Below are positions 14,418 to 18,918 of a stretch of DNA of 64,000 bases, piece by piece (positions within the stretch are counted from its first letter, which is position 1; the number at the start of each line of letters is the position of its first letter). The translations under genes were made by a program, and so were the position numbers. The notes under the pieces were generated by a model. That model had not been told where the DNA came from. It ran no database searches and worked only from the letters and a program-made list of their open reading frames with translations. Origin of the DNA: Anthoceros angustus (Eukaryota; Plantae; Anthocerotophyta); contig VJWM01000223.1 of the NCBI GenBank assembly GCA_010909165.1, positions 62,001 to 126,000 on the forward strand, read 5' to 3'.

Positions 14418-15631
14418 TGAGGGTGTGGACAATCCTGGAAGCCCAAGGGAACACGAGGTTACCCTATGTCAGCATCGGGGACTGTTGGGAACGCTTTCTC
14501 CGAGACGCGTGCGCTTTGATAGCAGCCTACAGTGTTGCATTATCATGGCAACATCTCGAAGCGTTGCCGTCCATCAAATCTGTCGTCCTTGGGAAGGGCG
14601 CGCCGACTTCCTCGTGTGAGTTCTTCAGCGCGAGACGTTGATAAAAACCTTGAAACCTCATGAGGGCGGGAAACAGTTTGGGTGTTCGGGTCCGAGATGG
14701 GATTATCAATTCATCCTCTGTTAAGGGACTTTGTAAGCTACAGTATGCGAAATCAGCACTATCTACTCCAAGGGCAGCAATTGGTGAAGCAGTGTGTTTG
14801 TGCTGTTTGTTGGGTAGGTTCGAAGTCTAACCGCTGGGGTTACTATCCGACGGTCGAGAAAATGATGCAACACGAGAGGCGTGCTGGAAGGGTAGGTTGC
14901 CAGGTGGGTCGGAGCCAAGGGGGTGGGCGCCGGGCGGTACACGTGTTTACAAGGCCGAAGCTGGAGAGGGAGGGGAAGAAAGAAGGGAAAGCAACTTGAA
15001 TCAAGAAGAAAGAACGAAGTGATGAGGCCACCTACATGTACCTACCGGCTACCTATTCTACCTACCAACGTACCTACCCACCAAGCGTACCTGGGCTGGC
15101 GCAAAGGTCGCATGTGCCGCAGCTTCTTGGTGCAGGGTAGGTGCAACCGAAGCCCGAAGCGGGAGCGGGGCATAAGAGGGTGAGGGACCGAGTCCCGCTT
15201 TCCTGTCTGTCCCGCTGCACGTGGCCTGCCTTGCCCGCTCGGCCCTGCCCTGCCCTGCCCTGCTTTGCCCTGGCCCCTGGCCCCTGGCCCCTGGCGCCCG
15301 GGCCTGCACTGCTCTGCACATTGTCCCTCGCATTCGCCTGTGTGTCGCAAAGCCACGCTCGTTGCTGTCCGCTGCCATACGAAGAGCAAGAGCAAGAGCA
15401 AGAAGAGCAAGGGGAAGACGAGACGGGTGGTGTGAAGGAGAAGAAGGAGAAGAAGACGAGACGCGAATCAATGCGCATGGCGTCTCAGCCGCAGCCGCAG
15501 CCGGAGCCTCCAATTGCAAGAAGAAGCAGCGCTGTGCTGGCCGAGGAGCGCGAGACGGCGTGAGGCAGCTCGGGGAGGGAGCAGGAGCGGGAGTGGGAGT
15601 GGAAGACGGAAAGGGAGCTCGGGGAGGGAGG

Positions 15632-16346
15632 ATGGATGATGCCGTCGCCGGCGCCCGACCGCCGGCTTCCTTCCTCATCGACCTGGACTTGTGGAACAGG
15701 TTCAACTCGGAGCTGCGAGCCGCGTGCCACTGGTGCACGCACCACCACACCACCACGCCTGCGGAGGCCGCCAAGCAGCTGGAGCGCGGGGAGAACTGGC
15801 CGCGCGACTGGATTTCCCGGAAGGTGAAGAATTCGACGCGTCAATTCGGAGGCCTCTTCATCTGCCCCGCGCCGGACTGCTCCGGTCACACCAACTCCAA
15901 GGGCGAGCGCCGCCGCCGCTGGTTCTGCCGCTTCTGCATCAACCGGCACCTCGGGGTGGACCTCAAGAACTTCTTTCAGCTGGACGAGGCGCACGGCAGG
16001 TGGATTCAGATCCCGACTCTCATCTGCTGGCATTGCCAGGCCAAGGTCGGGGACGCCGTGTGCGTCAATTGCCCGCAGAAGCACACCAAGCGGGCCAAGA
16101 GGCTGCCGGACGGCCCGCCCGCGCCGCATGTGCCCGTGGCCGTGGCGTACTTGGGAGGCCCTGGAGACACGCATTTTCCGCCATCGCCGGCTCCTGCTGC
16201 CGACGGCAAGCCCGCTCAGCTCCCCGCCGCGGACCTTGCTATTCCGCTGCACGCGCCTTCGCCGCTCTCCGACCTCCGCTTCCTCACTTCTTCGTCCGCA
16301 CCTCAGCAGCAGCAGCAGTCGCGGGGGTTTTTCTCTGAGAAGGCAG
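15632..16346 (+). CDS. Cys-rich zinc-finger exon (ADD-PHD / zf-4CXXC_R1-like) plus Pro/Ala/Gln linker; probable first exon of the downstream M18 paralogue
   Basis: MDDAV...ACHWC-x~40-GGLFICPAPDC-x~14-WFCRFCINRHLG-x~22-LICWHC-x8-CVNC. Followed by a splice-donor region (AAG/GCAG/GTGA) at 16340-16350. Confidence 0.65.
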
Positions 16347-16526
16347 GTGACCACGGGCTTTTGTTGGCGCTTGCAACATCACAAACGCCACACATCGGCT
16401 TGAGAAAGCATCACGTTATGACTTGTCACTTTACCCCTCTGCCTGCCTTCACGTTCCATCTTCCTCACACACCTTCTTCCTCACACCGCTTTTTCTTTTC
16501 CCTTCTCTTGTGTGCTTGGCATCCAG

Positions 16527-18918
16527 GATTTCGTGTGTGGAGAAGCGCCTGTCTCGGTTATACCAAGCTTTATCGACTTTGTAAATAATTCATGCACACC
16601 ATTTCACGCCACTGGTAACACCGATTGTTGTTTCCAACCTCTTGCCAATGTTTTGCTTCCCTTGCTACTGTGCTTACAATCATCATCTCGTGGTATCGGT
16701 CTTCTGCCAGCGGAGGCCAGGAGGCTTTTGATAGGAGTAGGCTTTCAGCAGTTGAGTGAATGTGAAGAGTGGCAACTGCAACCAGGAGGGCGCTACTTCT
16801 TCACTCGGAACATGTCCTCGATATATGCATTTGCTGTGGGCCGAAAGTCAGTGTTCTACCGCCTCTTTTACATGCTCATGGCCCTGCACTTGTAGTTGAT
16901 ACCATTTTGTTTTTACGGCTTTTTTCTAGAGCATAACACATTATGCCCTCTTCCTACTGCTGCTGCAGATTTAAACCAGGCAGCGGATTCCATGTTTTGG
17001 CCGCTCACATGGACAGTCCGTGCTTGAAAGTGAAGCCTGTATCAGCTTCGGCCAAAGGCAGGTTTTTGCATGTGCGTGTCCAGACATATGGAACCGGCTT
17101 ATGGCACACGTGGTTTGACCGAGATCTGAGTATTGCTGGCCGGGTTCTCATTCGAAGAAAAGATGGTGAACTTGCTCACGAGGTGGTTCGGGTCAGGCGT
17201 CCCATTCTGCGCATCCCCACACTCGCTGCCTACTCAGATAGGTTTGTTGTTCACTCCTCTCGATTTGTCATGACATTAGCAGCCTGTCGTGCCCTTACGT
17301 TCAGTCTTAGAATATGCTGGAATGACCTGAAATCGGCAGGGAGAGAGGGTCTCCTGGTGCTACAGCAAATGTAAGTAAAAGGAGTGATGTCTTGGAAGGT
17401 CTGGAGCTCTGGACAAGATCGAACTGGATTCACAGCTCGCCCCTGTTCTAGCGATGCAAATAGAGGCTGAGCTCACTGTATCATGTGAGTCAGAGTCATC
17501 CATACAGGCTGATAATGACAGTGGTCCCAATTATACTACACATGAGGCTCACCATCCAGTTCTGCTCCAGGTGAGCTCTACTATGGCTTACTTCTATGCA
17601 CAGGCAACTTCCAAATGACTTGGTTTCAAACTCATGTGCACCTCAATGACAGGTCTTGGCAGACGAGCTGAAATGCGAGGTGAGCGAAATTGCAGATTTT
17701 GAGCTGAGTGTATATGATACACAACCAAGTTGTGTTGGAGGTGCACGTGATGAATTTGTGTTTTCGGGCAGGCTTGATAACTTAGCCTCCTCCTTTTGTG
17801 CACTTTGGGCTCTGCTGGACACTTGTGCAGACCCTGTTTCATTAGTAGAGGAAAGCTCAGTTCGCATGGTCGCCCTCTTTGACAGTGGGGAGGTAATATG
17901 ATGATCATTGTGCTCGATCTCTGATCTGATGCAGTCGTTTGAATGCGATCGCACTTGTGGTTGATCTGGGGCTGGAAAATTGGCAACCTAACCTTGGATT
18001 GCACGAGATGGATTGCACGAGATGGATTGCACCTAAATCAACAGCGTGTTTGCAGGTTGGTTCAGACGCTGTCCAAAGCCCAGGACCTCAAACAATGTTT
18101 CAGGCCATGAATCGCATAGCGAGATGGCTTGCACGCAGCTCAAGTGGGGAAGGAATTGTTGAACGATCCATTAGGCGTTCATTTATTGGTGAGTGTTATG
18201 GTAGAGAATATCCTGTTGTAAGTCAGCTAAAGTGGATGGATACAAGTGTCATGAAAGAGGGAGCGGTAATTGTGTTAACCTCCTCTATCTGCCTGTCTTG
18301 TTGATTTGCAGTATCTGCGGACATGGCACATGCCTGGCATCCAAGCTACACGACAAACAGTGAAGAGCATCATCATCCAAAACTGCACGAAGGTTTGGTG
18401 ATCAAGCACGATGTCAACCAAAGTCATGCTACGGATGCCATCACTTCATTTCTGTTCAAGGAGCTGGCCAAGCGCAGCTGCATCCCCACACAGGTCTGGA
18501 AGATTGTGGCAGTGCATGTTTCGTTAGCTGAAGCTGCTGAAATTGTTCTCCAATAGTCCGAAGCTGATGACGATGTGGGATGGCTTGATTGGTGGATACA
18601 GAGTTTTCCAGTCATGAGTGATGTGGGGTGCTGCTCGACGGTGGATGCAATCTTGGCTTCAGGATACGGCATCCGTATTGTGGATTGCGGTTTGCCGCAG
18701 CTGTCCATGCACAGGTAAGAGATGTCTGGACACCCTTGTGCATTGTGGTTTTCGGTGTAGACCACACACAATCACAGCTGATAGCTTTCTGCTGTGGGCT
18801 GTGTGTCAGTGTGCGGGAAATGTGTGCATCTGAAGATATAGAGACGGCGGTTCGTCACTTCAAGGCCTTCTTCTCAGACTTCTCTGCTTTGGAGGATCAA
18901 CTGCGGGTCGACATTTAG
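16527..18918 (+). CDS. Aspartyl aminopeptidase (M18/DNPEP) paralogue, predicted catalytically impaired, about 10 exons
   Basis: Exons encode [52 protein letters not shown]|VGS, SADMAHAWHP, LSMHS and VREMC...LRVDI*. Intron positions match the gene at 27757. Confidence 0.88.

What the first reader, a model, noticed from the sequence alone, without database searches (positions are those of the whole stretch)
15632..18918. Chromatin-reader-like zinc finger apparently fused to a dead aspartyl aminopeptidase
Seen: an ORF from ATG 15632 with the Cys pattern CHWC...GGLFICPAPDC...FCRFCINRHLG...ICWHC...CVNC, then a Pro/Gln linker, ending ~180 bp before the first conserved exon of an M18 aminopeptidase. 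A GC-type donor (AAG|gcaggt, ~16343) joins in frame to the acceptor at 16526. Established: this spacing resembles the PHD finger of the ATRX/DNMT3 ADD domain (CRWC..GGNLICC..FCKKCILRNLG..WYCYIC) and the CDCA7 zf-4CXXC_R1 domain (CHQC..CRNPDC..FCGPCLRNRYG..WHCPPC), both chromatin/DNA-methylation readers. M18 peptidases are dodecameric cages and I know of none with such a domain. Inference: a duplicated metabolic enzyme may have been co-opted as a multivalent scaffold displaying a histone- or DNA-binding finger.
Basis: partly seen in the sequence, partly recalled or inferred. Interest (0 to 1): 0.8.

Follow-up and report, generated by a model that had tools for sequence, protein, structure and literature searches.

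The report
Zinc finger fused to dead aminopeptidase
A real, spliced plant gene joins an undescribed, very strongly conserved zinc-finger module to an aminopeptidase body that has lost its catalytic residues, and the same fusion is kept in hornwort-like and peat-moss-like genomes, so it probably has a non-enzymatic job that is still unknown.

Summary
The ORF from ATG 15632 carries five Cys pairs. Transcript contigs of two species splice it in frame, through the predicted GC-AG intron (16343-16526), to an M18 aminopeptidase gene. The model is 10 exons and 718 aa.

The M18 half keeps all five metal ligands. It has Gly at the general-base Glu301 position, and the swapped-loop His170 is lost. The same holds in every intact relative I found.

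The fusion, the exon end ...FFSEK and the GC donor recur in five further intact lineages (L011; L001; L002-L004; L015; L016), three of them moss-like, with silent sites saturated and dN/dS of 0.04-0.09. One lineage (L009/L010) shows a decaying M18 half.

The "dead" M18 type forms one group on a tree, which includes Sphagnum-labelled sequences.

The finger matches no Pfam family and no PDB sequence. A profile search of 1.84 billion proteins found only these orthologues and two distant relatives. Two AlphaFold models were too poor to use. The ADD/CDCA7 "chromatin reader" reading therefore remains an untested pattern resemblance.

The scan's index lists this same stretch twice (s1-703622, s1-703681), and nothing on other DNA.

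The parts
15213..15631 (+). 5' leader of the mRNA (first base of the longest cDNA contig to the start codon). It holds an out-of-frame upstream ORF at 15471-15563.
   Evidence: X1 record 2 starts at 15213. The uORF is read from the sequence.
15632..16342 (+). Exon 1, 237 codons: N-terminal helix, Cys-rich finger, basic patch, Pro/Gln-rich linker ending in FFSEK. It holds the only Met codon that can start a full-length M18 body.
   Evidence: cDNA contigs cover it without a break.
15665..16087 (+). Finger module (residues 12-152). Ten Cys at 32, 35, 78, 83, 99, 102, 132, 135, 144 and 147. A 42-residue insert between the first two Cys pairs is near-invariant in the hornwort-like and moss-like copies.
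   Evidence: Alignments A1-A3. dN/dS 0.094 against L011. Cys positions.
16079..16102 (+). Basic patch KHTKRAKR directly after the finger. It looks like a nuclear localisation signal and is kept in all lineages.
   Evidence: The nuclear role is an inference from the K-K/R-x-K/R consensus.
16244..16282 (+). Conserved short motif PLHAPSPLSDLRF inside the otherwise fast-evolving linker.
   Evidence: It aligns with LPLHV-SPVSDLRF, LPMHA-SPVSDFRY and similar in L001, L003, L015 and L016.
16343..16526 (+). GC-AG intron (184 nt) that joins the finger exon to the M18 body in phase 0.
   Evidence: The joint is in X1 and X6. The GC donor after ...GAGAAG and the acceptor GTGCAG|GG are conserved in L001, L003, L015 and L016. 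L011 keeps the GC donor with a different acceptor, CCTCAG|GGG.
16527..16614 (+). M18 exon (DFVCGEAPVSVIPSFIDFVNNSCTPFHAT...). It has no start codon of its own.
16711..16846 (+). M18 exon.
   Evidence: PF02127 E 2.8e-10. Joints.
16969..17241 (+). M18 exon with metal ligand His94 (AAHMD, 17000-17014). The swapped-loop position has Tyr in place of His170 (LAAYSD, 17222-17239).
   Evidence: PF02127 E 6.4e-31. Alignment to 4dyo and 7dde. Residue roles from PMC3472314.
17399..17570 (+). M18 exon, using the more deeply covered acceptor (in frame). An alternative acceptor at 17340 is also seen.
   Evidence: Joints 17241>17399 and 17241>17340. Frame read from the sequence.
17653..17892 (+). M18 exon with Asp264 (GRLDN, 17767-17781), and FDSGE (17878-17892) where active enzymes have D-N/H-E-E. 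Gly replaces the general base Glu301; ligand Glu302 is kept.
   Evidence: PF02127 E 8.3e-20. Alignment to 4dyo. Comparison with 40 relatives.
18056..18188 (+). M18 exon.
   Evidence: Joints. Conserved in relatives.
18312..18493 (+). M18 exon with Asp346 and His349 (SADMAH) and Lys374 (VIKHD). His stands at the Tyr381 position.
   Evidence: Alignment to 4dyo. PF02127 E 2.5e-14.
18602..18714 (+). M18 exon with His440 (LSMH, 18701-18712).
   Evidence: PF02127 E 3.1e-08.
18810..18918 (+). Last coding exon, ending in stop codon TAG at 18916-18918. The 3' UTR runs to at least 19076.
   Evidence: X1 record 3 reaches 19076.

Best explanation
SHOWN. This is one gene. It encodes a 718-residue protein made of three parts: an N-terminal ten-cysteine zinc-finger module of an undescribed family, followed by a basic patch; a disordered-looking Pro/Gln-rich linker; and a complete M18 (aspartyl-aminopeptidase-fold) body. 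The two halves are joined on the mRNA through a conserved GC-AG intron. The M18 exons have no start codon of their own, so the M18 body can only be made as the fusion. The body keeps the H.D.E.D.H ligands of the two-zinc centre and, in most lineages, the Lys374/His349 pocket. In every intact copy it lacks the water-activating Glu301 (now Gly) and the swapped-loop His170. Both halves are under strong purifying selection in hornwort-like and moss-like genomes.

INFERRED. The M18 body no longer cuts peptides. It serves as a zinc-holding, self-assembling core (M18 enzymes form tetrahedral dodecamers), possibly one that still holds acidic N-termini. It carries up to twelve fingers on flexible arms at its surface, as the N-terminal propeptide of yeast Ape1 sits on the surface of its dodecamer. 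The KHTKRAKR patch would take it to the nucleus, and the near-invariant finger would bind a highly conserved partner, either nucleic acid or protein. That partner is not known.
For: - Fusion on RNA: the same 184-nt in-frame joint is seen in cDNA contigs of two organisms, with no contig in the intron.
- Coding capacity: there is a single Met in exon 1 and no ATG in the first M18 exon. The model is 2157 nt with one terminal stop.
- M18 identity: PF02127 matches six exons.
- Catalytic residues: alignments to human DNPEP 4dyo give H94, D264, E302, D346, H440, H349 and K374 kept, E301>G and H170>Y. Residue roles, including loss of activity in His170Phe, come from PMC3472314.
- Same changes elsewhere: D-x-G-E is present and the His170 loop is replaced in L001, L003, L011, L015 and L016.
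- Selection: against L011, dN/dS is 0.039 (M18), 0.094 (finger) and 0.16 (linker). Against L001/L003, dS exceeds 2.6 and the M18 dN/dS is 0.066.
- Splice site: the GC donor after FFSEK is conserved in all five intact lineages, and the phase-0 acceptor GTGCAG|GG in four of them; L011 uses CCTCAG|GGG, also in phase 0.
- Single origin of the dead type: it forms one group with support 99/94 on an 80-residue tree.
- Surface position of an M18 N-terminal extension: PMC4931565.
Against: - Nothing shows the oligomeric state, metal content, lack of activity or location in the cell. All four are inferences from residues and from relatives.
- The finger's fold and ligand are unknown.
- In one lineage (L009/L010) the M18 half has frameshifts and a stop while the finger ORF is still expressed, with the joining intron retained. 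The finger may therefore work without the M18 body, or the gene may be dispensable there.
- The Lys374/His349 pocket is not kept in L015.
- Assembled contigs cannot give isoform proportions or prove a full-length 5'-to-3' molecule.
Confidence: 0.55

Rival explanations
1. The finger is a divergent ADD-type PHD or CDCA7-type zf-4CXXC_R1 domain. It reads histone tails or hemimethylated DNA, and the dead M18 cage displays it multivalently on chromatin.
For: - Pattern resemblance read from the sequence: CHWC, GG-L-F-I-C-x4-C, F-C-x2-C-I-x-R-x-L-G, and C-W-H-C.
- A weak language-model lead to zf-4CXXC_R1 clusters, scores 0.80 and 0.79.
- The basic NLS-like patch.
- Extreme conservation, as expected for a partner such as DNA or histones.
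Against: - No Pfam hit to PF10497, PHD or the ADD models at E<=10.
- No PDB hit with the whole ORF, the core alone or the profile at E<=10.
- Ten conserved Cys, not the eleven of the signature, and 42 residues between the first two pairs (PMC10538959).
- The atlas score is below the level the tool calls usable, and it did not recur with P0014.
- No usable structure model.
Confidence: 0.17
2. The M18 body is still an enzyme, using another base or acting on another substrate. The finger only targets or regulates it.
For: All five metal ligands, plus Lys374 and His349, are kept in the window. dN/dS is very low.
Against: Two separate residues needed for catalysis are missing in every intact lineage: Glu301 and His170. 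His170Phe abolishes human DNPEP activity (PMC3472314). The loop that carried His170 varies freely between lineages.
Confidence: 0.1
3. The N-terminal extension is an assembly or sorting device rather than a nucleic-acid or chromatin binder. It would link cages to each other or to a receptor, as the Ape1 propeptide does, or stand in cis for the zinc finger that binds the M18 enzyme Ape4 in trans in fission yeast (Nbr1 ZZ domain).
For: M18 cages are selective-autophagy cargo. [quoted passage not shown] An Ape4-Nbr1 ZZ complex has been solved (7dde; bioRxiv 10.1101/2021.02.07.430097).
Against: There is no ZZ or other Pfam match. A dead enzyme has no obvious reason to be delivered to the vacuole. 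The conserved basic patch fits nuclear import better.
Confidence: 0.1
4. The fusion mRNA is a by-product. The working product is a finger-only protein made from intron-retaining transcripts, and the M18 part is an untranslated or dying passenger.
For: In the L009/L010 lineage the only RNA contigs (L007, L008) retain this intron and encode a 306-aa finger-only ORF, while the M18 half is broken.
Against: In the window's organism and in X6 only the spliced form was assembled. The M18 exons are intact, with dN/dS of 0.04-0.07 over saturated silent sites, in five lineages. The phase-0 GC-AG junction is conserved.
Confidence: 0.05

Closest known systems
Aspartyl aminopeptidase, peptidase family M18 (human DNPEP, PDB 4dyo; plant and fungal homologues)
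   Same: Full-length M18 fold by Pfam on six exons. The H94/D264/E302/D346/H440 metal ligands and the Lys374/His349 acidic-P1 pocket are kept.
   Different: Gly replaces the general base Glu301. The swapped-loop His170 is lost. Tyr381 is His. A 237-residue finger-plus-linker extension sits in front. The gene belongs to a separate 'dead' group, apart from the canonical D-N-E-E sequences.
Yeast prApe1 (M18) with its N-terminal propeptide
   Same: An M18 body with an N-terminal extension. In Ape1 the extension emanates from the surface of the dodecamer and mediates binding to other molecules (PMC4931565).
   Different: The Ape1 propeptide is a short helix that is later cleaved from an active enzyme. 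Here the extension is a 150-residue zinc finger plus linker on an inactive body.
Fission-yeast Ape4 (M18) bound by the ZZ zinc finger of Nbr1 (PDB 7dde)
   Same: A zinc finger physically paired with an M18 cage.
   Different: There the two are separate natural proteins (the PDB chain is an engineered fusion). The finger is ZZ-type and the enzyme is active. Here the fusion is natural and there is no ZZ match.
CDCA7 zf-4CXXC_R1 (HMZF) domain and the PHD finger of the ATRX/DNMT3 ADD domain
   Same: Order and local spacing of several Cys pairs, and the F-C-x2-C-[IL]-x2-R-x-x-G stretch (read from the sequence; a resemblance only).
   Different: No HMM, PDB or fold support. Ten Cys rather than eleven. 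A 42-residue conserved insert. No GATA-like finger in front, as ADD has.
Dead aminopeptidase folds reused as binding modules (Spt16 N-terminal domain, Ebp1/PA2G4; cited from my own knowledge, not checked here)
   Same: A peptidase fold that has lost catalysis and is kept for binding, in nuclear or RNA-related complexes.
   Different: Those are M24 'pita-bread' folds and are monomeric. This is an M18 cage-type fold with an added zinc finger.

Membership tests
Peptidase family M18 (fold and sequence family) | Match to the Pfam model PF02127 above its gathering score | tested here: met
   Six exons score 33-108 bits against a cut-off of 24.
Peptidase family M18 (fold and sequence family) | H.D.E.D.H ligands of the binuclear zinc centre (His94, Asp264, Glu302, Asp346, His440) | tested here: met
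   All five align with 4dyo. Definition from PMC3472314.
Active M18 aminopeptidase | General base Glu301, which activates the water | tested here: not met
   The window has FDSGE, with Gly at that position. The same D-x-G-E is in 21 of the 22 related sequences of this type (one has Pro), against D-N-E-E (one D-D-E-E) in canonical ones.
Active M18 aminopeptidase | His170 on the loop swapped into the neighbour's active site | tested here: not met
   Tyr in the window (LAAYSD). Other residues stand there in L001, L009, L011, L015 and L016.
Aspartyl-specific M18 (DNPEP type) | Lys374 in the P1 pocket | tested here: met
   VIKHD aligns with VIKVN of 4dyo. In L015 it is not kept (LVLREG).
M18 tetrahedral dodecamer | Assembly of twelve subunits | not testable with these tools
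   The spliced protein has no reference, so it could not be folded or docked. The oligomeric state is inferred from the family only.
zf-4CXXC_R1 (CDCA7 type, PF10497) | Match to the Pfam model | tested here: not met
   No family at E<=1 for the whole exon, nor at E<=10 for the core, two orthologues and two distant homologues.
zf-4CXXC_R1 (CDCA7 type, PF10497) | Eleven signature cysteines in the family's spacing | tested here: not met
   Ten conserved Cys, with 42 residues between pairs 1 and 2. Definition from PMC10538959 and PMC11343034.
zf-4CXXC_R1 (CDCA7 type, PF10497) | The three ICF residues (R274, G294, R304), which define class I | tested here: inconclusive
   No trustworthy alignment to CDCA7 could be made, because no CDCA7 sequence was available by reference.
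ADD domain (ATRX-DNMT3-DNMT3L) | A GATA-like C2C2 finger followed by a PHD finger; match to the ADD or PHD models or to solved ADD chains | tested here: not met
   No Pfam hit. No PDB hit at E<=10 with the ORF, the core or the profile. No Cys pair lies ahead of CHWC.
PHD/ADD/4CXXC fold (structure level) | Cross-braced zinc topology in a model or structure | tested here: inconclusive
   The AlphaFold2 models had mean pLDDT 46.8 and 50.1. Foldseek against the PDB found nothing at E<=0.001.
ZZ zinc finger (Nbr1 type) | Match to the Pfam ZZ model | tested here: not met
   No hit at E<=10.

The most novel reading that the evidence does not exclude
The finger is a very divergent member of the ADD/CDCA7 class of histone or hemimethylated-DNA readers. 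The dead M18 body assembles into a tetrahedral cage that shows twelve copies of it. That would make a bryophyte-specific multivalent chromatin organiser, built from a retired metabolic enzyme and kept since before hornworts and mosses split.
Probability: 0.13. Interest if true: 0.85.

Novelty: new variant of a known kind. Interest (0 to 1): 0.62.

Why it matters
Pseudoenzymes and domain fusions are both known. I found no description of an M18 cage-type aminopeptidase that has lost catalysis and carries a zinc finger (paper search), and the profile search found no protein holding this finger with any known domain.

The gene is old and tightly constrained. Silent sites are saturated between lineages, dN/dS is 0.04-0.09, and even the unusual GC splice donor at the fusion point is kept. 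It therefore does something important in at least hornwort-like and peat-moss-like plants.

The finger is an orphan domain. Its 42-residue insert is near-invariant in the hornwort-like and moss-like copies. That makes it a good target for structure and ligand work.

If the cage reading holds, it would be a natural twelve-armed display scaffold. Transformable hornworts would make it directly testable.

Tried and rejected
- **Pfam.** Scans of the finger ORF, its core, orthologues and distant homologues at E<=1 or E<=10 gave nothing beyond noise such as Ephrin_rec_like and DUF1272.
- **PDB sequence searches.** I searched with the whole ORF, with the core lacking the insert, and with a profile. 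Only chance hits came back.
- **Structure prediction.** Two AlphaFold2 runs, with 8 and 11 aligned sequences, gave pLDDT 46.8 and 50.1, which is too low. Foldseek against the PDB with the better model had a best E of 1.2, which is meaningless. I ran no further search on such a model.
- **Protein atlas by features.** This gave a weak zf-4CXXC_R1 lead at 0.80 and no usable hit for the distant homologue P0014.
- **Word search with P0014.** It found only itself.
- **Second conserved ORF next to P0014/P0016.** No Pfam family.
- **M18 exons near P0014/P0016.** None found.
- **L001 ORF as a long query.** I tried the 329-aa called ORF of L001 to reach full-length M18 proteins. It contains stops, so I dropped it.
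- **Hornwort-only idea.** I first took L001-L004 for hornworts. Nucleotide-level similarity to Sphagnum chromosomes, including non-coding DNA, made me drop that.
- **Canonical GT donor at 16347.** Rejected, because the observed skip is 184 letters, not 180.
- **Literature.** No paper holds both 'hornwort' and 'aspartyl aminopeptidase'.
- The joined (spliced) protein was not searched, folded or docked, because it has no reference. I worked exon by exon and only counted length and stops in a script. No complex prediction was run.
Full report
**1. What is in the sequence**

The + strand ORF from ATG 15632 encodes 237 residues before the proposed donor.

- It has ten cysteines in five pairs: C32/C35 (CHWC), C78/C83 (CPAPDC), C99/C102 (CRFC), C132/C135 (CWHC) and C144/C147 (CVNC).
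- A basic patch, KHTKRAKR (residues 150-157), follows the last pair.
- A Pro/Gln-rich stretch then runs to FFSEK at 16342.
- The only Met in the exon is the first residue.

Downstream lie M18 aminopeptidase exons with good GT-AG borders. Six of them match Pfam PF02127 above its cut-off. The first M18 exon starts at 16527 and has no ATG. The leader holds an out-of-frame upstream ORF at 15471-15563.

**2. Is the fusion real?**

Yes. Assembled contigs of run X1 (identical to the window) and run X6 (a different organism label, about 97% identical) skip every predicted intron, so they are cDNA.

- Both skip 184 letters between 16340 and 16525, with three letters of alignment ambiguity.
- Among the four possible placements, only 16342 | GC...AG | 16527 has splice-site-like ends, and it is in phase 0.
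- X1 record 2 (1628 nt) runs from 15213 through the whole finger exon, across this joint, and on to 17242. Its record coordinates leave no room for extra letters.
- The depth of the bin covering the intron equals exactly the share contributed by the 27 exonic bases in it. No contig therefore lies in the intron.
- Using the GT at 16347 would skip 180 letters, which is not seen.

With the more deeply covered acceptor at 17399, the model has ten coding exons, 2157 nt and 718 codons, with one terminal stop.

Minor joints were also seen:

- An alternative acceptor at 17340. It stays in frame only if a further 17370>17418 joint exists, and two rows of the joints table were not shown.
- A 151-nt skip from 17680 to 17830 that shifts the frame.

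The joined protein has no reference. I therefore searched exon by exon and left out any search, fold or docking of the joined sequence.

**3. The peptidase half is catalytically disabled but otherwise intact**

Alignments of single exons to human DNPEP (4dyo; chain numbering is native +10) give the following:

| Residue in human DNPEP | Role | State in the window |
|---|---|---|
| His94, Asp264, Glu302, Asp346, His440 | metal ligands | all kept |
| Lys374, His349 | P1 pocket | kept |
| Glu301 | general base | Gly (FDSGE) |
| His170 | swapped loop | Tyr (LAAYSD) |
| Tyr381 | P1 pocket | His |

The structure paper gives the roles (PMC3472314). H.D.E.D.H is the strictly conserved metal signature. 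Glu301 activates the water. His170 comes from the neighbouring subunit, is required, and His170Phe is inactive. Lys374 marks acidic specificity. By these criteria the protein should bind metal but not hydrolyse.

**4. Relatives**

*The finger family.* A word search with the finger exon found 13 fragments. A profile search of all 1.84 billion cluster representatives found only the same family plus two distant proteins. These are P0014 (E 1.8e-9) and P0016 (E 1.7e-6), which share 37% identity with the window finger and the same Cys pattern. Both come from one unidentified run and have no M18 nearby.

*Loci fetched.* Fetching the contigs gave these loci.

- **L011.** GC 0.51, short introns, 87-92% identical to the window in most M18 exons (75% in the first). 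It is hornwort-like.
- **L001-L004.** GC 0.40.
- **L015 and L016.** GC 0.43-0.44.
- **L009/L010.** The same sequence from two samples.

*Shared architecture.* All of them have finger, linker and then M18 exons in order. In L001-L004, L009 and L015 the finger is split by an intron after W-I/F-Q, and L016 starts at its second part. That intron is absent in the window and in L011.

*The junction.* In all five intact lineages the linker exon ends ...FFSEK or ...FVSQK, followed by a GC donor:

- AAG|GCAGGT in the window, L001, L003 and L016
- AAG|GCACGC in L011
- AAG|GCATGT in L015

In L001, L003, L015 and L016 the next exon follows GTGCAG|GG in phase 0. L011 uses CCTCAG|GGG, also in phase 0. In L001 and L003 the GT four bases further on would run into a stop, as it does in the window.

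*Peat-moss affinity.* L001 and L003 align at the nucleotide level to Sphagnum chromosomes (L012-L014), at 66-84% identity and including non-coding parts. I therefore take L001-L004 to be peat-moss DNA from metagenomes. The gene is thus not confined to hornworts.

**5. Selection**

| Comparison | Region | dS | dN/dS |
|---|---|---|---|
| window vs L011 | M18 exons | 1.94 | 0.039 |
| window vs L011 | finger | 0.98 | 0.094 |
| window vs L011 | N-terminus plus linker | 2.22 | 0.16 |
| window vs L001/L003 | M18 exons | above 2.6 (saturated) | 0.066 |

The 42 residues between the first two Cys pairs are near-identical in the hornwort-like and moss-like copies. Within the linker, the motifs PLHAxSPxSDLRF and FFSEK, and the basic patch, are also kept.

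**6. Origin of the dead M18**

A word search with the exon that ends in FDSGE returned 40 exon-sized fragments. They fall into two kinds.

- **Dead type.** It reads CALWALLDTC...D-x-G-E (one has Pro) and has 22 sequences, including two labelled Sphagnum fallax and S. troendelagicum.
- **Canonical type.** It reads CALRAL...D-N-E-E.

On an 80-residue tree the dead type is one side of a branch with support 99/94. It lies next to four canonical sequences that are likely the bryophyte enzymes. The tree is short and midpoint-rooted, so it supports a single origin but does not prove it.

**7. A lineage where the gene is breaking down**

L009 and L010 are 99.8% alike and come from two samples. Their state is as follows:

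- frameshifts in two M18 exons
- a stop in the last exon
- changed ligand-region residues (AHTGSPC, SADMVDA)
- Pro at the Glu301 position
- Tyr for finger Cys83
- a one-base frame shift just before the exon end

RNA contigs of that organism (L007, L008) have the finger intron removed. They then run on into the next intron and give a 306-aa finger-only ORF. Either the gene is dying there or it has been reduced to the finger.

Sphagnum chromosomes also hold partial dead copies. These lack finger exon 1 and the M18 exons between the second and the D-x-G-E exon, and are annotated as 122-aa hypothetical proteins.

**8. What the finger is**

This remains open.

- No Pfam family.
- No PDB sequence or profile hit at E<=10.
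- Two AlphaFold2 models with pLDDT 47 and 50.
- Foldseek found nothing.
- The language-model search gave zf-4CXXC_R1 clusters at 0.80 and 0.79, below the level the tool treats as usable. The distant homologue gave nothing.

The family definition asks for eleven signature cysteines and, for class I, three ICF residues (PMC10538959; PMC11343034). Here there are ten Cys, and a 42-residue insert separates the first two pairs.

**9. Most likely working**

*Shown.* One gene, one fusion mRNA, a metal-site-bearing but catalytically stripped M18 body, an orphan zinc finger, and long-term purifying selection on both.

*Inferred.*

- The body still assembles like other M18 proteins, which form tetrahedral dodecamers (PMC3472314).
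- Its N-terminal extensions lie on the outside, as in Ape1 (PMC4931565). Up to twelve fingers would then be displayed on flexible arms.
- The basic patch suggests nuclear import.
- The near-invariance of the finger suggests a very conserved partner.
- The kept Lys374/His349 pocket leaves room for binding acidic N-termini without cutting them.

Rivals are listed separately. The chromatin-reader version is the most interesting of them and is not excluded.

**10. Known or new**

- I found no paper on this gene.
- The closest known things are canonical M18 enzymes, the Ape1 propeptide, the Nbr1 ZZ-Ape4 pair, and dead aminopeptidase folds used as binding modules.
- I rate it a new variant of known kinds (a pseudoenzyme plus a domain fusion) that carries an undescribed finger family.
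- The scan's index holds only this same stretch (s1-703622, s1-703681).

Noticed in passing
L009:600-5800 and L010 (same locus, second sample); RNA contigs L007, L008: In one moss-like lineage the M18 half has two frameshifts and a premature stop, and finger Cys83 is Tyr. The RNA contigs keep the finger-M18 intron, giving a 306-aa finger-only ORF. The gene looks either dying or reduced there.
   Followed up: partly
L012:7300-10500, L013 and L014 (Sphagnum chromosomes): Partial, decayed copies of the dead-M18 gene. They hold linker remnants, two early M18 exons, then directly the D-x-G-E exon and the next one. L013/L014 have a stop in the first M18 exon. They are annotated as 122-aa hypothetical proteins (BDL97_15G059300 in S. 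fallax). Many variants occur in peat metagenomes.
   Followed up: partly
L005:274-1239 and L006:269-1567 (run SRR17405563): Two distant homologues of the finger (37% identity, same Cys pattern) in an unidentified organism. They are not next to M18. Each is followed by a second conserved ORF (FDEAFLTCPDPGGARWSFKVNDHCVILPQV...) with no Pfam family, and they share flanking repeats, which may point to a repeated element.
   Followed up: partly
window:16025 region; L001:6444-6605, L003:5921-6076, L009:994-1564, L015:4696-5222: The finger exon is split by an intron after W-I/F-Q in the moss-like loci. It is continuous in the window and in L011. This is an intron loss or gain between the two groups.
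   Followed up: no
window:17241-17399 and 17680-17830: Alternative splicing is seen in both cDNA sets. There are two acceptors after 17241 (17340 and 17399). A 151-nt internal skip shifts the frame and would remove the Asp264 region.
   Followed up: partly
window:15471-15563 and 15232-15300: The 5' leader holds a 30-codon out-of-frame upstream ORF. It also holds a GCCCTG/GGCCCCT microsatellite-like stretch, which the reads tool skipped as a repeat.
   Followed up: no
window:19081-19450: The next gene downstream is transcribed and spliced (joint 19300>19397 in X1). The ORF from 19151 starts [18 protein letters not shown] and has a hydrophobic stretch.
   Followed up: no
window:19959-20120: An ORF fragment reads [27 protein letters not shown], which looks like a cyclophilin-type peptidyl-prolyl isomerase exon.
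   Followed up: no
window:14400-14814: A transcript contig of X1 covers this stretch just upstream of the finger gene.
   Followed up: no
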